Source of the DNA: Ylistrum balloti
Lineage: Eukaryota
DNA: 64,000 bases
Assembly: GCF_031769215.1 (NCBI RefSeq)
Contig: NW_026781915.1
Coordinates: 2,480,001-2,544,000, forward strand
Direction: 5' to 3'
Positions within the stretch are counted from its first letter, which is position 1; each line of letters begins with the position of its first letter. Below, in pieces: positions 39,301 through 52,480 of this stretch. A program made the translations under genes and the position numbers. A model generated the notes under the pieces. That model made no database searches. It saw nothing but the letters and a program-made list of their open reading frames with translations, and was not told the DNA's origin.

Positions 39301-42300
39301 GACGAAAGCTTCGCTCAAACTCGTAAGGATCTTCCTCTGTAAATGTCAAATGATGACAATAATACATAGTAAACTGGAATGTATGGTTACTTTTGGAGGA
39401 CACTGGATTGCGTAGGGAAGTCAGGTTACCTTAGGAGGGCACTGGATTGCGTAGGGAAGTCAGGTTACCTTAGGAGAACACCGGATTGTGTAGGGAAGTC
39501 AGGTTACTTTTGGAGAACACCGGATTGTGTCGGGTAGTCTGGTTACTTTTGGAGAACACCAGATTGTGTAGGGTAGTCAGGTTACTTTTTGAGAACACCA
39601 GATTGTGTAGGCTAGTCGGTTTGATTTTAGAAGGCATCAGATTGTGTAGGGTAGTCAGGTTACTTTTTGAGAACACCAGATTGTGTAGGGAAGTCAGGTT
39701 ACTTTTTGAGAACACCAGAATGTGTAGGGTTGTCGGTTTGATTTCGGAGGACATCAGATTGTGTAGGGTAGTCAGGTTGCCTTTAGAGTGAAGTGGTTTT
39801 TATGAATTAAGTTTGTATAATCAGCAGTTTCTTACAATTCTTCGACACGTCTACTTTGTACTCATTTTTTAAATTTTTTTGAACTGGCGCAAACGTTGTT
39901 TCACTATAATGTTTTGAAAAAGCTATAGATTGTATCTTTAATAGCATTGCCTTTTGCTGTGCCGGTTTGTCAAAAGTGATCCAATTAACCTGTAGCATAA
40001 TTTTCCTTTTATCAATTCCATTCTACTACTTCCATAAGAAGTAATGAATTAGCACATAAAAACATCAACAAAACCTTTATTCGGCATAATTCCATGATGT
40101 CACAATCTTTCAACTACATTGGGAAATAATTCATGATATATGTCAACCCTTCGCGTTTTTTCACAATTCCGGAATTTTTTTAACTACATGTAAAACTCGG
40201 TTATAAAATTGAACGTCGTGAGAAATCTACGGCGTACAGTAGACTGCTATTGTGTGTTTAGGTAGAATGGAATTATGGCTTTGTAATTTATAAAAGCAGG
40301 CATTTAAAGTGTGATACTGATTTGTCGGACTGAACTAGTAATCGGGGATAATATGATTAGTAAACTTGGGATTTCAGGTTCTTAACGGAACACACGTTGG
40401 TGGGTTGTAGGATTTTCCGTCTCTCAGATTCCTTCTGCTGCCGGGCATAGTCTCGGCGTTGTCAGTGTTCTGACGACGTCGGAAAACACCTGCATCTTTT
40501 TTTTTTTTTTTTTAACACATCACCAGGAGAGGGGAAGTAACTCGTACGTACTTAGCCTTATTTCGTGTGTCTTACCTCCCTTGAAGTGGTTTTGACGTAG
40601 TGAATGTAAGGCTGGTGATGTTTGCACCAGTCATTATCTTTGGTGTGAAACTCTGTCATGGTCAGTCGTATCAATCTGAAATTTTAAGCAAGGTATCAAA
40701 TTTATTATCCGTTCGTCTTATCATTAACTGAATTGCTAACGATTTAAAATAAACAAGCAAAAGGAAAATCAATGAAATAGCTTTCTGTAACAGAAATACC
40801 ACTCTTTTAGCCATTCAGGTTGATAAAATCGTTCCAACAAATTCTGATGTAAGGTTACAAACTTTGTCTAACTGAGGTAATGCATCCTTCACATTTATCC
40901 CGCAAAAATAAATGTTTCAAACAAACAACACAAAATTTAGATACTTATAAATAATAATCAAAGGATCTTGTGAATTTTATTTATAAATTCATTTACTTAT
41001 TTGAAAACTAATTTTATCGTCCCAACAAGAAATTTGACTATGCCTTGTTGTTATATAGTAGTACCTCTTTTAACATATTTTTTCATGTGTTTTAGGTGAA
41101 CTACGTAATTAATGCTAAAAGAGGATAAACTTTAGATGATTTCCCCAAACAAAGAAACATATATAATGCATTCCTAACAAAGAAGCTACCAGACCGATGA
41201 ACCCCGTTACCTCTCTTTGTTTATCTTCAGCGGTAACGTGTCTACACCAACACTAACCATACAAACCACAAATAGGGCTTACTTCAAACTGAGCTACACG
41301 TGTAGACTACAGGAAATGTATGCGCAACACTGGGCGTCGAGTGCATTGTTACATTTTACTCAAAGTACAATGCATGTTCAAAAACGAAAATATGCCATCT
41401 GATACGTTTACAAAAGAATCTATAACTGGGGCATGAATCAAGATATTAACATATTTCGTAAAAGCAATCACTTCTTTCCGGCTTTATTCTTCTAATAAAA
41501 GTACATAATCTGAAGAAATTGATAATCGATAACAATTTTTGTACATAACTGTATATCATGCCTCACAAGAAAGGCATTGTGTGTCACCCAGTGCACCTGT
41601 TACACTGTAGTTAGCTACATGGAATGCATTAGTCCATGAAATGACAGGAGTGGAACCTGACGTTAATCAATGGTTACTCGCTTTAATACAAACATAAAGA
41701 GACAATCATCTTGCAATAAAGACATAATAAAGTAGCTGTGAAAATTTTACTGATACACAAAATCTACTTAATTTTATCATTAAAACTTGAACCAGACTCA
41801 TAATTTAAGGATATGTTGTGTTTGAATTGACTACTTAGCATTTATCCTGGTGGCTAGCTATGAGCTGCTGCGTCATTTCAATCTACGCACACAAGTTATA
41901 TATTACATAATCAAGTGTTGAAATCATGATTCGGAAACGTGACCAGCTGTCGAAGATAATCGATAAAATTATGCAAGCTTTTTCATTCAGGTCACTGACA
42001 TTGCGATGCACGATTTCAGTTATATTACGCTCTGTTTCTCTTAACACATACGTGTGTACGTATTTCACACTTACAATGACATCGTGAATATATATAGATA
42101 CATGCATGCGTATGGTAGCTATTCATATACATGAAGCGTGATCCATAAGAGCCACAACTGGCTTTGGTACTAAGAATAAAATACCTTGCAATGATGTTTT
42201 CGTTCAAACTTTCGAACACCTTGATCCTCCATAGCTTCAGTTTTTCCCATCCATTGTGTGTCTTGACCCACTCGTCCCCGTTGGATCTCCAATCTCGTCC

Positions 42301-42312
42301 TAGATACGGCAT
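36311..42312 (-). CDS. FBXO25/FBXO32: F-box only protein 25/32 (atrogin-1/MAFbx-like), 8 exons, about 336 aa
   Basis: Starts MPYLGRDWRSNGDEWVKTHNGW (family N-terminus MPFLGQDWRSPG..WxKTxDGW). Exons 42312-42185, 40675-40576 (HQPYIHYVKTTSRE), 39336-39244 (LSEAFVHLDMSGAVKDIRRFNYVCK), 38817-38724 (alternative acceptor 9 nt downstream possible), 38404-38235, 37494-37229 (F-box FQDLPQDC..LWKQLCFFHFS..DWKYIY), 36782-36710 (KDVYADTLAICNHC), 36397-36311 (GHPC..LSPEVFLNLFSI stop). Total 1011 nt, frame-consistent. Confidence 0.93.
36954..37070 (+). mobile_element. Penelope-like repeat relic with hammerhead core (copy D), in FBXO intron
   Basis: TTTGGATTTTCCTCAGT..CCTAGGTTTT leader; GCATCA-CTGACGA(37006-37012)-GTCC-AATAA-GGAC-AACA..TA-TGATGC. 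Stems I and II intact, GAAA mutated. Confidence 0.6.
39385..39785. repeat. 39-nt tandem minisatellite, about 10 copies, in FBXO intron 2
   Basis: Unit GGTTACTTTTTGAGAACACCAGATTGTGTAGGGTAGTCA; gives 13-aa-periodic ORFs on both strands. Confidence 0.92.
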
Positions 42313-45289
42313 ATTGCCCCGAATTAAATCTTATTGCACTAGCTTTGTCCTTTGTTTTGATTTTGCGCAACTGTTTACGTTTTGCAGGAAGTGTATCAGA
42401 ATTCTTCGCGGAGACGACATTATAGGTCACTGATTGGCTAGCGAGAATATTGGGACATGTTTGATTGGTTCGTTGCGTTTCGATGTTAATGCCACATGGC
42501 AGGTCACATGGTTTTGTTTACATCGATCAGCTGAGAGGTTTGAGAAGGCTTACCACTGACTTTACTTCGCAGTTTTCATGTTATGACGCATTTGCATGCC
42601 TAAGCCCTGGATTTCACCTAGTTTTCTTAACAAGAAGGGTCGTCAGCATACCACAATATCTAAATGTTAAAATAGAATAAGTAGACACATACATGGATGC
42701 ACACATATCTAATGTCAAATTAATGACATTTTAACACATAATCATCGAAAAATCGTACATCAACAAATTCTCATGGTAAAGTATTTTGGGTAAAAAAAGT
42801 AGGACATTTTTTGTATCAGTTTCAATATAACTACACGTACTCCTCAAGGACATTTCGATCTTTATCAGCTAGTTTTAATATTTTTTCGTTCTCCCTACTT
42901 GTACAATAACGACAACGTTTTAAACTTTTTAAGTGTACTGTAATTGTGTCACGGTTTTCTGTTCAAAATCAAATCTTCATTCACTCAAAGAACAAGCAGT
43001 GTAGATCTCTACTATCAAATTATTGCTGGTATAATCCAATAGACTCACCCTGTTTCATTTCAACAAATCTAATACAAACATATACGTGCATTAACATTGT
43101 TGCTACATGGTATGAACATACATTGTGTTACAGTACATGAGTAATGTAACGCCAGCTTGCCTCTTCAAGTATTCAAGTGCATGATTTTTTTTATATATAT
43201 ATTTAGGAAAACATACTTATATATAGCAACATTTGGTCTTGTAAATGCTTCATATTTGACTTAATAAGAGACAACTGGTGACATGATCTGCCTAATGCGG
43301 TTAAGTATCAAAATCTATCTGACAAGGAAATACTGGGATTTCCTCACTGTAATGAAATTGATATTATTGACGTCGGAAATCTTTTTCCTCGCTATCTATT
43401 CACTGGAAAACTGTCTTGCCATAATTTGTTTAGTATGTAGGTTGCCAGGTTATGCGGTGATCATGCTCCTCTCCGGAAAAACGGTTAATTAATGGGGAAA
43501 ACTAAAATAAGAAAGATACCGTTTAGTAAAGATAGTAAGTAAAGATACGTACATATGGTTTATACTTTTTACATCATGACGTATCACATGACTACCATAA
43601 CATGGGAAGGCATGGAATATTTGTGTGATATGTGTGACTAAGTATCAAAGCGAGTATCATATATTCATCAAAGACGTGTCCAAGTATTACAGCATCAGAC
43701 TTTGGACCCCGGTGCCAGAGATACGATGCGCGTGGTTCGATATCCATAGTCGGTGCGACCACTTTCTCAAGAAACTGTGTTTATGGATCTCGACCTGTAC
43801 TGTCGTGGTCGTGTCCTTGAGCAAGACTATTTACCCAGATGCTTTGGGCAACATACGACGGGATTCCCGCATACTGTTCAGTGAGATACTGCCTACTACG
43901 AGAAGGCCACAATTCAAAAGAAATCCACCAAGCAAACCCAGTATCACAGCAGTTACAGACGTACATGCATTAAAATAACATAATACAAAAAAGACGTGCC
44001 CCAGTATTCAGATGCGACTACATTCCTTTATAAGAGTCTGCTTGTAAACACGCTCTCCTTGCCAAATAGATGTGCGCCGTACGTTTTCCCTTATAGATGT
44101 AAGGCTACACATATCTTACACGGCAAGTAAGTATAATGTACCACGAAATTCGTTAGGCTAGAACAGTGTCTGGTTTGGCAAACATCCAACTAATCTCTGT
44201 TGTTCATTCCCTTTTGACCAGCTGTTGATAGAATGGCTAGGAATTGAAAACCTGATGACAACGACGACGTTTTCAGTCGATGATAGTAACATCCTCGTTT
44301 ATTCCGTCGCATCACACTATATCCGTCACACTATGCATAAGCCAATTTTATTATTCTATACATTATTTCCATTTGTTCCCCTTGTGTACTGGGAAAAGAT
44401 GGCTGTTTAGATATATATACATCTCTGTTTTCAGTAAACACTCTATTTGAGAATCTGATAACAAAATAATGAATTGATCTAAACCATGATTAGACGCAAC
44501 ACCTTGTCAACCTCAATATACTTAACGAAAATGGACTTATCTTAAGTACGCTTTCCTAAGACACGTAAACATAAATGATTAATTCTCATAGCAATGTACT
44601 CAGAGACGAAACAGAAAGGGACTGTATTTAAATCTGTAAAAGGGTATCGAAAGTAAACTGATGATGATAGCGAAACACGGAGCACCGTACTCGGAAAATG
44701 CACAGAAAATGTGTCAAGGGTGTAGCTGTGACGTGTGTAGATAAACCACAACACGTGACACACTTACCTAAAAATTCTACAGGTAAACATTAAGTTAACA
44801 ATGCTGCATTGTCACTTAACACTTAACCTTGTATCGTATGCCATGGCATGCAGTTTGTTTGACATAATGAATTTATAATTGAATTTTAATAGCAGATGTC
44901 ATATAACAAAGATTTTAATTTGAACTTGTCAACCTTTGACCATTTGCATCGCATCTAGGTCAATAGTTAGGACCTCCTTACGGTCTAAAATACAGCACAC
45001 TATCCAAGGTCGGTCATCTACCGACAAACTAGCTGGTAGGTGACGCCGTACCCGGCACAAACATCATTTCCTTACAGGATAGAGGACGTGTGTACAGTCT
45101 CTCGTTAAATTCTCAGATACAAGTAAGTCTTTCATACTGTTTGTGCTATGGCAATTGTTGATATCATATTTTCCACTACAGTAAACAAAATCTCTACTAA
45201 CAGGAGATGAGGTCAACAGACTTCGAACATACTATCATGTCGATTAAAGACGTTTGAAATACGGTGGTTACATGGGAAGAGAGCAATGA

Positions 45290-46040
45290 GTACATAAGTG
45301 TAAAAGGTACAGGTAGGTACAGGTAGATACAGGTGAGAAATGTTACATGTGAGGCACGGTACGTGTGATAGATGGAAGAGGTGATAAATCTAAAAAAAAA
45401 AAAAATGGAGAGGTGTGAGACATGGTACAGACGAGAGACGGTACGGGTGATGGATGGTCAAATAAGGGAAGTAATGAATACAGGTGAGACATGGTTCAGG
45501 TTAATGGGATACAGGTGAGCAATAGTTACAGGTAAAAAATAGATACTCGTGGGAGATGGTACAGGTGAGAATGGTGAAGAGATTTACGTGAGAGACAGAT
45601 ACATGTGAGACGGATACAGGTGAGTGATTTCACTGATGAATGACAGATACAGGTGATTTGGTGGTTCAAAAGAGAAAGTAACACAGGTGAAAGGCGGATA
45701 CAGCTGAGCGATTGATGCAAGTGACTGATGTAACAGATTGGTGGTAGATTAATACAGTTTACCGTTAAGAAGTGGTAAAAGTGCGAAATGGATATTGGTG
45801 AGAAATGGTACGGAGATATGATACAGGCGAAGAATGCAACACAAATGCCCTATAGGTGAGAGATAGAACAGAGAGGAGGTACAGATTGGTATGTGTGAGA
45901 GACGGTATATATTAGAGAGAGACGATGCAGGTAATATATGGGTACATGTGGGGAATGGTACAGACGAGAGATGGTGAGGAGAATCAAAGGGGATTTATTC
46001 TGAGGGGATATAGGAAAGAGATCGATACAGGCGAGTGATA
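45290..46040. repeat. Degenerate purine-rich repeat of GATACAGGTGAG-like motifs
   Basis: About a dozen ACAGGT(G/A) copies with irregular spacing, e.g. 45308-45335, 45478, 45508, 45558, 45615, 45647, 45683, 46024. Confidence 0.7.
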
Positions 46041-46961
46041 AGTACCCGTTAGTTTTATAATGTATGTCTTTAAAGATTCATATTGTGGTTTTATATTTAA
46101 TATTAATGTCTTTGTCGAACCTCGATGTTCGACAATAAAACAAATAGTAAGTGTACGACTATAAACGTTGAAATATAAACCTTCGAAGGATTTATTACAG
46201 GACTAGATATGTCTTATTTATGCTATATACGGGTGCAATTGTCACGAACAAGCATTTGTTACGAAAACAATGTTATTCTTGTTAATGAAAACATTAATAC
46301 GTCGTGTGTACGTGATGGGGTTGGTTACGAATAGATAAGTCACATATTGTTCCAAAGTACAATGTGTAATCTGTTCACGTGATAAGAGAAGCGCCCGGGT
46401 GACGTACACCTTTTAATAATATGCATAAGATAAGCTTGTGACGGAGCACTTCATCCAAAAAGTATTGTTTCAAGCGGTATGATACAGTGATTATATGGAT
46501 ATAAGTCACAAGCAAATATTCGTCGACCTGGTGTGTAATAAAAATAAGTATAATTTAACTCCTGTTTATGTCGTCGAGATCTTTTTATATTGACAACGAG
46601 ACTGATGTATCGCAAAGATATACAGCGATGCGCGGTTTTGTTTTGTTTTGTTTGTTTTTGTTTTATTTATTTTTTTTTCTAAAATTGCAACAGAAAAATA
46701 CAATACAGTACAATCAAGGAATTCGCCAATAATGATTAGGATTACCCAAGGATTCGTCAAAAACAAATTACTTACAAAAAAACGAGAAATCACGTATGTT
46801 CACTGACCACTTGTTACAATTACTCTTTATCTCGGAAATTACTTAAAATCAATTAAATAGAATCGGCTTGAGCTGATTTGAGATTCACCAACGGAATGAT
46901 AGATTAGATGTATTCAAACGAATGCTCTTTATTCTGGGCCTACATTTGACGTTTTTCGATC

Positions 46962-47075
46962 ACTTTGGATTTTCCTCAGTCGCCTCCTAGGTTTAAAAAT
47001 TAGACCCTTAACATTACTGACGAGACTTGCAAGCTAAAAAAAGAGCTGTATGGCGCAGTTCAATTCATTATTTGA
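46962..47075 (+). mobile_element. Penelope-like repeat relic with hammerhead core (copy E), upstream of SELENOP coding exon
   Basis: Same TTTGGATTTTCCTCAGT..CCTAGGTTT leader; ACATTA-CTGACGA-..-AGCTGTA-TGGCGCAGTTCAATTC. Confidence 0.5.
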
Positions 47076-47230
47076 CTCTGCTATATTTGATTCTAATAAT
47101 TAAATTGTGTTACATGTTGCTATATACATAATATGCGTCTTTTGTATAATCTTAATAAGGCATTAACATAAAGAGAAGTTACATGATTTAGAGTGATTCT
47201 TTTGATCTTGTTCCAGGAGAAAGCACTAAA

Positions 47231-49550
47231 ATGCGGGGCCCCGGCCCTTTGCTGGTCGTGTGGCTAGCCGCCATTCTCGTTGCATCTGCGTGCGGTCAAC
47301 TCTGCACCCGTCCACCAATATGGCGGACGGAGAACGGCACGAGTCCCATGCAGGAAACGGAAGGCAACGTACGAGTGGTGGCTCTACTAAAGGCCAGCTG
47401 AGGATTTTGTGTACAGGTTGCCACAGCGTAAGTATCAAAAACTTTCACGGATAAAACTCGCAGGACTTTGAGAACTTACAGCTCATGGCATTGTGATGTA
47501 TCTACATATAATCGCTTTAATGTTATTCTAGTATTTCTACTTGATAAGATGAAAAACATAGCGCCATATGTAAACACAATTTCTACAAAATACCTTGCAT
47601 GTCTGATCAGGTCTGTGCTAATTTTAGGATTTATTTATAATCATAAATTTATTTTTGTTTTAGACTCGAACGCATCCGGTCCAAGTTCGAACGCCGTGGC
47701 ATAACTGGAATCAAATTCATGATTGTCAATATGAACTTGGACGAGGCACGACAGCAAGTCCAGAATCTTAAAAATGTCGTTAACGAGGTGGAAATTCCGA
47801 TATATCAGGACAACGATGAGTTACAAATTTGGAGAACACTCGGCGGAGACAAAGACTACCTCTACATTTATGACGGGTAAACCTATCTATGATGGCAGAC
47901 AAATACACTTTTTTACTGAAAATTCACAAATGGCATTTTCACATTTCAGATCAGCCTAATAGTATCATCAAGTTTTGTTTGTTTGGATTTTGTTTTTACA
48001 AATGCATGGATATATGAAATGAATCATATAAGCGTACTTTCTATAGAAATTTTTCATTTACTTACAGGTGTGGAATGCACAGATACCTACTGACGTCAGC
48101 CGACATATTGGACCGTGTGCAAAGTTCCATAGATAGGCGCCTTATCAAGCGTCGCATACGCCAGGTAAAACGACGCGATCGGTGCGCCCGGCAATGTCGC
48201 AGGTACAGGCGGCGCTTGATGTCGGCGGAGGACATGGACCGGATGCAGGGACACCAACCACATGTTATATCTATGTCACGTCAAAGGAACTCCGATTCCG
48301 ATGCAAATCGGACACCTGCGTGTATGGAGCGTAACTGCCGAGGACAGAACAATCCACAAAGCAGACACAGATTGATTCATCGGATGTGACGTCACATGTT
48401 GAGACGAGGCCTTCTGGGAGAATCGACACAGTCTTGATTGTGTCCACGCAACTTCCGGGATGTATGTACGTGCACACGTTATCGTCAGTCAGGTAGAATG
48501 CGTTTCTGCGCATGCTCTGAAATCACGCCTTCCATTAACGTGCGTTGTATGTGATATAACTGTAACGAGTTTACTAACGGACATGACGTAGAAATTCCAC
48601 TTGTCCGACCGTCTTGACGACTGTTGACCAGCTGACACTGTAATAGCGACAATAACCTCCAGTCAGCAACATGTCAGTGACCAACAGGACAATCGACTGA
48701 CATTGCTACACCATCATCAGTCTCCTGATCTTGTGATGGAGGTGTCTGCGTATGACAAGGAATTAACGAGTCGTGTATGTGACGGGCGACCGACATGGGA
48801 ACGTCATGAGAATGTCATTTAGACGCGACGTCATGTTTTTGACCTAGGGACGCATCACACGGTGATATGTGACACTGCCAGACAACGTCAACCGGCGTCA
48901 GCGAGAACTCCTGACAGTGACACGGACAACAGAGTGGTCGGAGTAGCGACAGTGTTGTCTGAGAATGACAACACACGACCGGAAACTGTCATTGAAATTG
49001 CGAGGTTTCCAGCAATGGAAACCTTCAGTGACAATGACCAATAGGTCGGACTCCAACTGCTGTTGTCCACTGACGAACCGGAAGTGACACCGGAAGTAGA
49101 TGACATTGACCAACAACCGCCACGGCTGGAAAGACTTGAGAATGCATATCAGGTAGGAACGGTGACCATAGTTCGTGCATGTGAGGCACAGACCAACAGC
49201 CGTGTGGATGACAGTCATTGACATCTGATATGGCATCCGACATCGTCTGACAGTGCGACAGACAGAATAATACGACGGAAATGTGAGCTTGACAGAGTCT
49301 GTCCGGTCATCCGGATGGAACCTGACAATGTCACTCTATCAGCACAGACTGACAATGACAAGGTCTTACTACAGACGGGAACATTTGACAAGAAACTGGG
49401 GTCGTGGGCGCACCCATTTGACCTTGACAACAACAATGACGGTGACCCGTTTCCGCGTGACAATGACGAAGCAGCCGGAATGGGAAGTCACTCTGACTTT
49501 GACAGTCAGCTGGACGCAACTGACAGTGCTCAGGGTCGCATTTAGGGTAG
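47231..49550 (+). CDS. SELENOP: Selenoprotein P with Sec-rich C-terminal tail; about 630 aa, 42 in-frame TGA read as selenocysteine
   Basis: Coding exons 47231-47427 (MRGPGPLLVVWLAAILVASACG signal peptide; VVALLKAS-TGA-GFC = UxxC, TGA at 47399-47401), 47664-47876 (IKFMIVN..IPIYQD..IWRTLGGDKDYLYIYD, SelP N-terminal thioredoxin-like fold) and 48068-49550 (CG.. then 41 in-frame TGA from 48387 to 49523, first TAA/TAG is TAG 49548-49550). Total 1893 nt. SECIS-like hairpin in the 3' UTR. Confidence 0.93.
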
Positions 49551-49817
49551 AAAGGAAACCAAAATTAAGACACCAATTTCAATTTTTTACTGATGCTTAC
49601 AAAAACGCTAAATGACATCAGCAATTATTTGGCGTTTTCTAATTCATATATATAACCTTAATGCTAAAACAAAATATCATTTCTCCAAATACAACTTTTA
49701 ACATACATCAATTGGTAAGAAAAAAGCGAAGTTCAAGAAATGCTACCCCATGCTACTGACCGGGACAATATATATACCATATCAATGGTTTCATGAACGA
49801 GTTGGTCATACAATGGA

Positions 49818-49880
49818 TAGCCTACATGACGGCACTTGGACAAAACCCAGAAGGTATCCAATGTTCAGATAATTTGGCTG
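49818..49880 (+). promoter_or_regulatory. SECIS element (type II/form 2 candidate) in the SELENOP 3' UTR
   Basis: ATGA (49826-49829), 12 nt, AAAA (49842-49845), then GA (49868-49869). Helix I TAGCC/GGCTG; helix II GGCA-C-TTGGA with TCCAA-TGTT; apical minihelix ACC/GGT closing CAGAA. Folded by eye only. Confidence 0.8.
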
Positions 49881-51799
49881 ACCAGTTGACCAAAGCCCTG
49901 ACATGACACTATTGATATTGACAAGAGAATGAATCTATGACATGAAACTGGTATTACACTGTATTGAACATTGTACTGCTGAGGTGTGAATAAGGAAGGA
50001 AGTGGTGAGTATGTGCTGCTAAAATAAATGTATCTTGTTATTTGTACTATGTTTATTAACAATTGTTTGTAAAACAAACAGAAAACAATGCATATATGTG
50101 CATCTGCAATCTCTGTGTCGCTTCTGCGATTACATCTTCGAAATCCAGAATAATTTACACATCATCTCAGCGCCTTTGGAAAGTGACAAGATGATATCAC
50201 AGTAGGCCAATTAATCGATTCGAGAAATGCAAACAAAACGTCCATTAAGATTACAGGAATGCTTACTTCCCTTACTTTTCAGGCCCGTTTACCAAGACAC
50301 ATTCCGAGAATTACAGAAAATAGTCCAATAGACATCCTGAATTTCGAAGATGTTTAACCCCTCCATCGGGGTCATCCATTTATATAATTTATAGTTAGCC
50401 ATTATAAATAATATGTTTAAAATGTTAATAGGCTAGCAACAAAGAACCCGTGAGCAAAACGCATTTTAAGAAGAGAATACGTGTACTTGAAAATAACATT
50501 CCAATAAAATATTCGCATTGTAAATTAGATTGAGTAAATTGCGAAACTTCAACATTGCTGTTTTGCACATGTTTTGTTTGTGACTAGCCCTCATCAAGCC
50601 CCTGTGTTCAGTGTAATCGAGTAAAACATAATTGTGAACGAGAAAACTATATTTGTGTTAACTTATCATTCCCTGTCAGTCTTTAAATAGTGTTACCGCC
50701 ACAATAAATTAGCCATTTAGGTAGAATGTATTTCTATACTCTATTATTTGGATATGTATTTGGGAAGATTGCAACAACAGATGTAGAATTCTAGCTCACA
50801 AGCACCTGTGTCAGAGAGAGTGTGTTTGAGGGAGAGACGTATCGGTAATAATGGTCGGTATGATACACGTGTTCGTCGACCTGTGACGACCCGCCATAAA
50901 GCTAGGGATAGAAGTGGTGGAGTCTGAGGGACTCTAGTCGACCGGTGTATCCTTACGACCACTGTGTGTAAGGAGATTAACACTTCCTTCCTTGTTCAGT
51001 ACTAATGTGAAAAAAATGTTATGAATAATAATAAAAATGATAATAACATACATTCATGTGTTTTTTCTGTCGTATGAGTGAAATAACCGGAGTCTGAAAT
51101 GTAATAAGCTGAAACGATATTCAGGACTTGGCCGCGTGTAACTACTGTAGGAACACGAGCTGGCAGCAACCATTACAAAATGTTTTTTTAATGATTTATG
51201 TTTAGAAACATATCTGGTATGGAGTATATACACTTTACTTATGCATTTTGAAGCCTTTCTAAAACCTACCTCGTTCCAAAGTGAAGGGATGTATACTTGT
51301 TGATCTAAACTCTTTCCAAAACTTGACCCAAAAAACCTTTAAATTGGGTTATAGATAAAAGACACGTTTTATTCTGTAAGTCCAAAAGAAGGAGATCATT
51401 AACTGTCTTAACATTAAATCAAGACCAAAAATGACTGTATGCGTTAAATAGAAGAAAGGTAGGCATATCACAGATACCTCAAGCTGGACGATGACGCGGA
51501 CGGTGAACAACATTAGCTGACAGTTTGCGATAACCTCAGAGCTAAAAAAATATATATGTATATATACACTGCAGTATTGTTTCTCCGTATTTTCAAATGT
51601 TAATATTGAAGACCTTTAATGTAAATATTTGAATTCCCTAAGATAAAATGTCGTATATAAAATATTCCAGAGCAGCAGAATTTTTAAAAAATGCTTCTAG
51701 CCCTAAACGGTCACGAGTTCTATAGTTGTCGTTCTTATCATATACCATAGAAATTGTCTCATTGACAAAGTAAGATTACTTGAACTACATTGTACATAG

Positions 51800-52480
51800 C
51801 ACAAATACAAAATACAACATTATCTGTTATCCCATGCTAATAATTCTAACCAAATTTGCATTATTTCCAATGGAAATGAATGTTCTTCGACGCCATACCC
51901 CCTAGAGGGCATTAAGACACTTAATCCATAAAGAACATTTGATTCTATCATATCTCGGTCTTGAGAAGAAGACTTTTGAAATTTGAGCCAATTTGACACC
52001 ATTTGGTAATGACCATCGCCCCATTGTCAATATGTACATCAAACTGTCACCCGAAACTTATTATTTTTACCAAATATGAATTATTAGCAATGCAAATTCA
52101 ACAACTTATGCTCAGAAATGTAACTCGTCTATATAAACCATATTAAACTTTACCTCCTGTTGGACCCTGGATTCATGAAAATCGCTCATTTGATAAAGCA
52201 CCTAAAGACCCTTCTGTCAATGGAAAGTATTGAATCATACCCCATCTGGTTCTTGAGATCTGAAATTTCAGTGAATTTGATCCCCTTTGCCTTGCACAAC
52301 TGGTCCCTTGGAAGTGGATAATTAACATTTAGCCATGAATGGGCTTTACAAAATTCCATAAAAACAGGTTCAAGTTTTTTTTAGAAGTTGAAAATGTCAC
52401 TTGCTAAGGACAAATGACTCCCGACACTGTACAAAAGACAATTGGAAAAGGTCACTTAGACACTTTGTCTTAAGATGATA
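51800..52480 (-). mobile_element. Degenerate copy of a HINE-like element related to 31303-32009
   Basis: Shared motifs TCTTGAGAAGAAGACTTTTGAAATTT..ATTTGAC, GGATTCATGAAA, and AAAGGTCACTTAG near the end. Confidence 0.4.

What the first reader, a model, noticed from the sequence alone, without database searches (positions are those of the whole stretch)
48387..49547. Tail is a periodic array of [U/C]-X-[U/C] pairs, metallothionein-like, with a Cys-to-Sec gradient
Seen (hand translation): 387 residues contain 41 Sec and 23 Cys. Of these 64, 59 lie in U/C-X-U/C motifs (ULC, CTC, CAC, CMU, UHC, CQU, USC, CVU ... UQU, UEU, UHU, UAU, UPU, URU, ULU, UQC), mostly separated by short S/T/G/D/N-rich linkers, with no TGG codon. 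The proximal part (48387-48900) has 12 Sec and 15 Cys; the distal part (48901-49547) has 29 Sec and 8 Cys. Established: Cys-X-Cys arrays are the metal-binding signature of metallothioneins, and selenolates bind soft metals (Hg, Cd, Ag) strongly. Inference: beyond selenium storage, the tail may act as a secreted seleno-metallothionein-like chelator or form diselenide/selenenylsulfide hairpins. The gradient means early-terminated isoforms would be Cys-rich and only full-length product Sec-rich, giving selenium-dependent output.
Basis: partly seen in the sequence, partly recalled or inferred. Interest (0 to 1): 0.78.

Follow-up and report, generated by a model that had tools for sequence, protein, structure and literature searches.

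The report
Scallop selenoprotein P paired-selenocysteine tail
This stretch is the selenium-rich tail of a scallop's selenoprotein P, where 41 selenocysteines and 23 cysteines sit almost entirely in conserved two-apart pairs; this pairing is real but is already a known hallmark of the protein family, not a new metal-binding protein.

Summary
Shuffling gives 19±5 paired residues.

The stretch is the last-exon tail of a three-exon selenoprotein P gene of the scallop Ylistrum balloti. The gene has 630 codons and 42 Sec, a SelP_N domain with a UxxC motif, a signal peptide and two conserved SECIS elements.

In three other pectinids the tail is collinear without a single indel. All 64 U/C columns stay U/C, 59 keep the same residue, and dN/dS is about 0.15 at dS 0.6-1.0. 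The pairing is therefore a selected protein-level feature, and so is the Cys-to-Sec gradient (Spearman rho 0.60, p=4e-4).

"Periodic" overstates the spacing, which runs from 6 to 29 residues with no repeat in the DNA.

The same pairs, with U-x-U last, occur in rat and human SELENOP. A 2025 review already compares them with the metallothionein CXC motif, and mollusc SelenoP genes with many UGA codons were published in 2019.

The metallothionein likeness stops at the motif. The thiol/selenol density is too low, there are no CC or CxxC motifs, and the X residue after Sec is largely fixed by a UGA-C decoding context.

The likeliest role is self-capping Se-S/Se-Se pairs in a selenium-transport domain.

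The scan's other notes (s1-234337, s1-234444) concern this same stretch, not other DNA.

The parts
47231..47427 (+). Exon 1 coding part: start codon, signal-peptide-like hydrophobic N-terminus, and the first Sec codon (TGA 47399-47401) in a U-G-F-C redox motif. GT donor at 47428.
   Evidence: Sequence read. Pfam SelP_N matches at E=1.9e-6, 27.9 bits against a cut-off of 23.2.
47664..47876 (+). Exon 2: the rest of the thioredoxin-fold SelP_N domain, ending in the family's conserved YIYDG(C)G block.
   Evidence: Pfam SelP_N matches at E=1.4e-13, 51.3 bits. AG acceptor at 47662-63 and GT donor at 47877-78. The join agrees with spliced pectinid transcripts.
48068..48386 (+). Start of exon 3: an Arg-rich basic pre-tail region of 106 codons with four Cys. 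It stands where vertebrates have the His-rich region.
   Evidence: It is 84/79/70/61% identical to the pectinid proteins P0001-P0004.
48387..49547 (+). The finding itself: a 387-codon Sec/Cys tail with 41 TGA and 23 Cys forming 30 U/C-x-U/C motifs (2 C-x-C, 18 mixed, 10 U-x-U).
49548..49550 (+). True stop codon TAG (TAA in P. maximus and A. irradians).
49826..49870 (+). SECIS 1 core, type II: AUGA, 12 nt, AAAA, mini-stem, then AGAU. It lies 276 nt after the stop.
   Evidence: It is almost invariant in three species. Rfam missed it.
50883..50928 (+). SECIS 2 core, type II: GUGA here and in P. maximus, AUGA in A. irradians; 11 nt, AAAG, mini-stem, then UGAG. It lies 1.33 kb after the stop.
   Evidence: There is one compensatory pair (U-A to C-G). 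It lies inside the A. irradians mRNA contig L004.

Best explanation
The stretch encodes the Sec-rich C-terminal domain of selenoprotein P of the scallop Ylistrum balloti. The protein is secreted and carries selenium as selenocysteine.

Shown here:
- The whole tail is translated in this frame through all 41 UGAs.
- The positions of the 64 Sec/Cys residues, their i/i+2 pairing and their spacing are held fixed by purifying selection across Pectinidae.
- Sec and Cys swap only occasionally, and only opposite a Sec partner.

Inferred:
- Each pair is a self-contained capping unit. The two chalcogens close a small intramolecular selenenylsulfide (U-x-C, C-x-U) or diselenide (U-x-U) ring. This keeps the reactive selenols oxidised, protected from over-oxidation and selenium loss, and unable to cross-link while the disordered polar chain travels in the haemolymph.
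- After uptake the chain is degraded and the selenium is reused.
- The X residue and the residue after the second Sec are largely dictated by the UGA-C context that favours Sec insertion over termination.
- The Cys-to-Sec gradient fits processive decoding. Sec insertion is a bottleneck early and efficient later, so UGA is cheapest at the distal end. All tail UGAs lie in the last exon, which established knowledge places out of reach of nonsense-mediated decay.
- Soft-metal binding is a likely side property of the selenolate pairs, not the selected function.
For: Identity:
- SelP_N hits on exons 1 and 2 with a UxxC motif.
- Two conserved SECIS elements, both inside the spliced A. irradians mRNA contigs that also span the whole tail.

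Translation and selection:
- The tail is 387 codons in Y. balloti, P. maximus and A. irradians, with no indels and no TAA/TAG.
- dN/dS is 0.14-0.18 at dS 0.58-0.99, and the distal half is as constrained as the proximal half.
- All 64 U/C columns are kept, against 197 of 315 other columns invariant (Fisher p=4e-12).
- TGA to TGY changes run at 3%, against 15% for A to Y at four-fold sites (p=7e-12).

Protein-level pairing:
- Two pairs are pure C-x-C, 18 are mixed and 10 are U-x-U.
- In the 5 columns that toggle between U and C, the partner is always an invariant U.

Decoding context:
- C follows TGA in 32 of 41 cases, against 15% elsewhere.

Literature:
- Se-S and Se-Se protection of SelP Sec residues was predicted, and Sec number is inverse to Cys number (PMC2397514).
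- Two Se-S bonds were mapped on the rat peptide holding UQC and CSU, and rat and human tails show the same pairs with U-x-U last (PMC8230778 Table 1).
- Decoding is efficient after a first-UGA bottleneck (PMC5727441).
Against: - No redox state, bond connectivity or protein product was observed for any scallop SelenoP.
- The bonds could link neighbouring pairs rather than close within a pair.
- Five U/C residues are unpaired.
- The toggle rule rests on only 5 columns (chance about 0.1).
- The four species are one family, so the conservation of the gradient is not independent evidence.
- No RNA run exists for this species.
- I could not read the key paper on mollusc SelenoP.
Confidence: 0.6

Rival explanations
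1. Seleno-metallothionein. The pairs were selected as soft-metal (Cd, Hg, Ag, Cu) chelation sites, and the tail detoxifies or carries metals in the haemolymph.
For: C-x-C is a metallothionein motif. A review states that SELENOP binds Cd through CXU/UXC/UXU, and that rat SELENOP binds metal-selenide complexes (PMC11818150). Scallops hyper-accumulate Cd in a 35-66 kDa soluble fraction (PMC12357810). The proteomics in that study used public models in which SelenoP is truncated, so tail peptides could not have been identified.
Against: - U+C is only 16.5% of residues, against roughly 25-30% Cys in metallothioneins (my knowledge).
- There are no CC or CxxC motifs, and pairs are isolated by linkers of about 10 residues, so compact metal-thiolate clusters are unlikely.
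- X is set by the UGA-C context.
- The scallop Cd study attributed binding to a meprin, with no selenium signal reported.
- Strong selection for Sec over Cys is explained just as well by selenium delivery.
Confidence: 0.15
2. Redox polymer. The U-x-C/U-x-U units are catalytic, acting as peroxidase- or isomerase-like CXC mimics, so the tail is an extracellular antioxidant and not cargo.
For: Sec is kept against Cys far more strongly than neutral expectation. The N-domain was proposed as a redox partner of the tail (PMC2397514).
Against: There is no fold and no conserved catalytic environment. Linkers are polar, look disordered, and 37% of linker columns vary. In mammals the tail is established as the selenium supplier (PMC8230778).
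Confidence: 0.1
3. RNA-level cause. UGA codons come in twos, one codon apart, because this helps the Sec-insertion machinery, and the protein pairing is a by-product.
For: There is a strong nucleotide context at the UGAs. Decoding of SELENOP is processive.
Against: 23 of the 64 paired-class positions are Cys codons. Two pairs contain no UGA at all, and 18 contain only one. Columns that switch between TGA and TGY keep the pairing. Synonymous sites are otherwise free, with dS 0.6-1.0.
Confidence: 0.04
4. The TGAs are real stops. The protein ends at 48387, as in the public gene models, and the 'tail' is untranslated sequence.
For: Public annotations stop there: P0005 (200 aa), P0001 (179 aa) and P0003 (178 aa), all named 'uncharacterized protein'.
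Against: dN/dS is about 0.15 in this frame. There are no indels or TAA/TAG in 387 codons in four species. There are 38 invariant TGA columns and two conserved SECIS elements. None of 20,000 shuffles is stop-free.
Confidence: 0.01

Closest known systems
Vertebrate SELENOP C-terminal Sec-rich domain (human and rat: 9 Sec)
   Same: It has the same architecture: signal peptide, SelP_N with UxxC, a basic linker, a Sec-rich tail in the last exon and two SECIS elements. It has the same pair motif (UQC, CSU, CQU/CQC, USU/URU, UKU/UEU in the peptides of PMC8230778 Table 1). It follows the same order, with mixed pairs first and U-x-U pairs at the very end.
   Different: The scallop tail has 41 Sec, not 9, and 30 pairs, not about 5. 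Pairing is much stricter (92% of U/C) and there is no CC. The pre-tail is Arg-rich, not His-rich. SECIS 2 uses GUGA. I could not test sequence homology between the tails; Lobanov et al. found none for sea urchin.
Bivalve SelenoP with many UGAs (46 in Pacific oyster, up to 132 in another bivalve; Baclaocos et al. 2019, J Mol Biol 431:4381, PMC6885538)
   Same: It is the same kind of gene in the same animal class. The number of UGAs (42) falls in the published range, as quoted in PMC8230778 and PMC13134290.
   Different: The paper is not held. I therefore cannot say whether scallops, the pair rule or the gradient are described in it. Word-based searches reached only pectinids.
Metallothioneins (C-x-C, CC, C-x-x-C clusters)
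   Same: Both have a C-x-C type motif, are poor in aromatic residues, and have polar residues between the ligands. Selenolates and thiolates are both soft-metal ligands.
   Different: This is not a small protein. Ligand density is about half, only the i/i+2 motif occurs, linkers are long, and there are 15 His. The tail is attached to a thioredoxin-fold domain, and there is no homology.
Selenoprotein L (UxxU diselenide) and the thioredoxin reductase C-terminal Cys-Sec pair
   Same: These are precedents for short-range intramolecular Se-Se and Se-S rings that protect or activate Sec (SelL: PMC2397514; TrxR: my knowledge).
   Different: Those are single catalytic motifs inside folded enzymes with different spacing (i+3, i+1). 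Here there are 30 i+2 units in a chain that looks disordered.

Membership tests
Selenoprotein P (SELENOP/SelP) | N-terminal thioredoxin-fold SelP_N domain | tested here: met
   Pfam PF04592 matches exon 1 (27.9 bits) and exon 2 (51.3 bits), both above the 23.2 cut-off.
Selenoprotein P (SELENOP/SelP) | Sec in a UxxC redox motif near the N-terminus | tested here: met
   U-G-F-C, with TGA at 47399-47401.
Selenoprotein P (SELENOP/SelP) | Multiple in-frame UGA codons in a C-terminal domain encoded by the last exon | tested here: met
   41 TGA lie in exon 3 and are under purifying selection in frame.
Selenoprotein P (SELENOP/SelP) | Two SECIS elements in the 3'UTR | tested here: met
   SECIS 1 lies at 49826-49870 and SECIS 2 at 50883-50928. 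Both are conserved in three species and both lie inside the A. irradians mRNA contig. Rfam found neither.
Selenoprotein P (SELENOP/SelP) | Secretion signal | tested here: inconclusive
   A hydrophobic N-terminus followed by small residues is seen by eye. No signal-peptide predictor was available.
Selenoprotein P (SELENOP/SelP) | Sec actually inserted at the tail UGAs; protein carries selenium | not testable with these tools
   This needs 75Se labelling, ribosome profiling or mass spectrometry. No RNA run exists for this species.
Metallothionein | Small protein with about 25-30% Cys | tested here: not met
   The tail is 387 aa on a 630-aa protein. U+C is 16.5% and Cys 5.9%.
Metallothionein | Mixture of CC, C-x-C and C-x-x-C motifs allowing compact metal-thiolate clusters | tested here: not met
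   There are 0 adjacent pairs, 1 pair at i+3 and 30 at i+2, and pair units are 6-29 residues apart.
Metallothionein | Binds d10 metals stoichiometrically | not testable with these tools
   Only literature on mammalian SELENOP is available (PMC11818150).

The most novel reading that the evidence does not exclude
The scallop SelenoP tail is a working soft-metal sink as well as a selenium carrier. Its 30 selenolate/thiolate pairs would bind Cd/Hg/Ag (perhaps as metal-selenide complexes) and contribute to the unusual Cd accumulation of scallops. This would have gone unseen because every public gene model cuts the protein at the second UGA, so proteomics cannot match tail peptides. The position-coded Cys-to-Sec gradient would then make the metal and selenium capacity of the secreted product depend on selenium supply through graded early termination.
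Probability: 0.1. Interest if true: 0.7.

Novelty: new member of a known kind. Interest (0 to 1): 0.33.

Why it matters
The gene is a textbook-grade example of massive UGA recoding, with 42 Sec in one protein. In Y. balloti, P. maximus and A. irradians it is present in public databases only as a truncated "uncharacterized protein". The corrected model is useful for annotation, for scallop proteomics and for selenium and metal toxicology in a food species.

The comparative data add two modest points:
- Every Sec/Cys position, and even the Sec-or-Cys choice at 59 of 64 positions, is held across a family at near-saturated synonymous divergence.
- The order "mixed pairs first, Sec-Sec pairs last" is shared with mammals.

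Both points argue that the pair, and not the single Sec, is the functional unit of SelenoP tails. Neither overturns current understanding.

Tried and rejected
- Rfam scans at E up to 1 and up to 10 found no SECIS. Both elements were found by alignment and a hand-written scanner. My first scanner was too strict and crashed.
- A conserved 3'UTR block near 49940-50010 looked like a second SECIS but does not fold as one, so I dropped it.
- TRF and the repeat finder found no tandem repeat behind the array. The tail is therefore not a recent repeat expansion.
- All three word-based protein searches returned pectinids only, so oyster and mussel tails were not reached.
- I did not launch the exhaustive protein search, because the operators reserve it for open proteins or claims of absence.
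- The Baclaocos 2019 paper is not held under its DOI or PMC id.
- Jiang et al. 2012 has no mollusc tail data of use.
- The only sequencing run that holds the locus is a DNA contig (introns present, 6 SNPs, one synonymous in the tail), so there is no expression evidence in this species.
- I ran no structure prediction or Pfam SelP_C scan of the tail. The tools take no read-through protein by reference, the pieces between UGAs are under 20 aa, and I did not type the sequence.
- The long stop-free antisense frame (48482-49564, minus strand) is a by-product of the sense-frame composition.

Full report
**Observation.**
Translating window 48387-49547 in frame gives 387 codons with 41 TGA, 23 Cys, no Trp and no TAA/TAG. 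59 of the 64 Sec/Cys residues lie in U/C-x-U/C motifs. The split is 12U/15C before 48900 and 29U/8C after, exactly as reported. Shuffling the residues gives 19.1±4.7 paired residues, with a maximum of 37 in 20,000 trials. No two U/C are adjacent and only one pair is at i+3, so the rule is strictly i/i+2. The array is not periodic in the strict sense. Units are 6-29 residues apart (mean 12.9, CV 0.40 against 0.59±0.10 for random placement, p about 0.01), and autocorrelation peaks only at lag 2. There is no DNA tandem repeat.

**What it is.**
The stretch is the end of a three-exon gene:
- Exon 1 is 47231-47427. It has a hydrophobic N-terminus and U-G-F-C, with TGA at 47399.
- Exon 2 is 47664-47876.
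- Exon 3 runs from 48068 to the TAG at 49548.

Exons 1 and 2 match Pfam SelP_N above threshold. The gene has 630 codons and 42 Sec.

The window is identical to Ylistrum balloti assembly GCA_031769215.1 (L008 equals window 41788-52389). There the gene is annotated as a 200-aa "uncharacterized protein" that starts after the first UGA and stops at the second.

Two type II SECIS elements follow the stop:
- SECIS 1 lies at 49826-49870 (AUGA, 12 nt, AAAA, then AGAU).
- SECIS 2 lies at 50883-50928 (GUGA here and in Pecten maximus, AUGA in Argopecten irradians), with one compensatory base-pair change.

Rfam detected neither. GUGA-type SECIS elements are on record for sponges (PMC3473315).

**Orthologues.**
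Word-based searches with the pre-tail found proteins from P. maximus, A. irradians, Y. balloti and two unnamed Logan transcript contigs. Their loci were fetched.

Read with TGA as U, the tail is 387 residues in P. maximus and A. irradians as well. It is 377+ residues in contig L006, which runs off its end. There are no indels. The A. irradians contigs L003-L005 are spliced mRNAs that span the first-exon ORF, the whole tail and both SECIS elements.

Across the four species:
- All 64 U/C columns remain U/C: 38 invariant Sec, 21 invariant Cys and 5 that toggle.
- Only 197 of 315 other columns are invariant (Fisher p=4e-12).
- In each of the five toggling columns the partner is an invariant Sec.

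dN/dS is 0.14-0.18 with dS 0.58-0.99, and the distal half is at least as constrained as the proximal half. TGA to TGY differences run at 3% of comparisons, against 15% for A to Y at four-fold sites (p=7e-12). So Sec is specifically retained.

The tail is clearly translated through all its UGAs.

**Level of the constraint.**
The pairing acts on the protein and not on UGA spacing, for three reasons:
- 23 of the paired-class positions are Cys codons.
- Two pairs are pure C-x-C.
- Toggling columns keep the pairing.

By contrast, the residue after Sec is set at the RNA level. The base after TGA is C in 32 of 41 cases, against 15% elsewhere and 26% after Cys codons, in all four species. Hence Q/R/P/H/L follows Sec in 33 of 41 cases. 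This agrees with the scan's separate note s1-234444. The X of U-x-U is thus mostly a by-product of decoding context, which weakens any argument from X to coordination chemistry.

**Gradient.**
Sec lies further downstream than Cys (Mann-Whitney p=0.007). Sec per pair rises along the tail (Spearman 0.60, p=4e-4). Pair types run C-x-C, then mixed, then U-x-U (2/18/10). The same holds in the other three species, but they share 59 of 64 states, so this is not independent evidence.

Independent support comes from the peptide table of PMC8230778:
- Rat runs UQC, CSU, CQC, then USU, UKU.
- Human runs UQC, CSU, CQU, then URU, UEU.

These are mixed pairs first and Sec-Sec pairs at the very C-terminus. 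In vitro studies, and ribosome profiling of mouse SECIS deletions, describe a bottleneck at the first UGA and efficient decoding of the downstream UGAs (PMC5727441). That offers a simple cost explanation. It echoes the known rat isoforms ending at UGA 2, 3 and 7 but is untested here.

**Mechanism.**
The best-supported reading is that each pair is a self-capping unit forming a small Se-S or Se-Se ring. This protects the selenols of a disordered, polar chain (15% hydrophobic residues) whose job is selenium delivery.
- Lobanov et al. predicted this protection for Sec-rich SelP (PMC2397514).
- Two Se-S bonds were mapped on the rat peptide that carries UQC and CSU.
- The trend that toggles occur only opposite a Sec fits "one Sec plus any chalcogen partner", but rests on five columns.

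**Metallothionein comparison.**
Only the C-x-C motif is shared. Ligand density, the absence of CC and CxxC, the long linkers, the size and the domain context all fail the family's defining features.

The idea itself is published. A 2025 review sets SELENOP's CXU/UXC/UXU beside metallothionein's CXC for Cd binding (PMC11818150).

One lead remains open. Scallops hyper-accumulate Cd in a 35-66 kDa soluble fraction, and the proteomic search that blamed a meprin could not have matched SelenoP tail peptides, because public models are truncated (PMC12357810).

**Novelty.**
Mollusc SelenoP genes with dozens of UGAs are known: 46 in oyster and up to 132 elsewhere (Baclaocos et al. 2019, cited; the paper itself is not held). 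The pair motif is known from vertebrates. This is a new, mis-annotated member of a known kind, with tidy comparative evidence for the pair as the selected unit.

Noticed in passing
window 50023-50028: An AATAAA signal lies between SECIS 1 and SECIS 2. Use of it would give an mRNA lacking SECIS 2, as described for a fraction of human SELENOP mRNA (PMC5133445 abstract). In A. irradians the two SECIS elements are about 300 nt apart; here and in P. maximus they are about 1,050 nt apart.
   Followed up: partly
window 48069-48386: The pre-tail is strongly Arg-rich, with several dibasic sites and four conserved Cys. It stands where vertebrate SELENOP has its His-rich heparin-binding region. It may be a heparin-binding or protease-cleavage linker between the N-domain and the tail.
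   Followed up: no
P0005 (Y. balloti), P0001 (P. maximus), P0003 (A. irradians); loci L008, L001, L002: [quoted passage not shown] Gene callers also placed spurious 132-134 aa ORFs in another frame of the tail (L003-L006).
   Followed up: yes
window 49990-50015 (aligned with L001 and L004): A purine-rich block in the 3'UTR (GGAAGGAAGTG plus flanks) is conserved in three species. It does not fold as a SECIS and its function is unknown.
   Followed up: partly
window 39373-39869: A tandemly repeated stretch reads as repeated peptide units in two frames (a minisatellite-like array) upstream of the gene.
   Followed up: no
window 41788-42312, minus strand (L008 1-525): The end of a neighbouring gene whose product carries an FBXO32-type helical domain, according to the precomputed Pfam hit.
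   Followed up: no
window 47212, 47503, 47540, 48413, 49881, 49981: Six single-base differences separate the window from the one public DNA run that holds it. The only one in the tail (48413 T>A) is synonymous. 49881 lies just 3' of the SECIS 1 core.
   Followed up: partly
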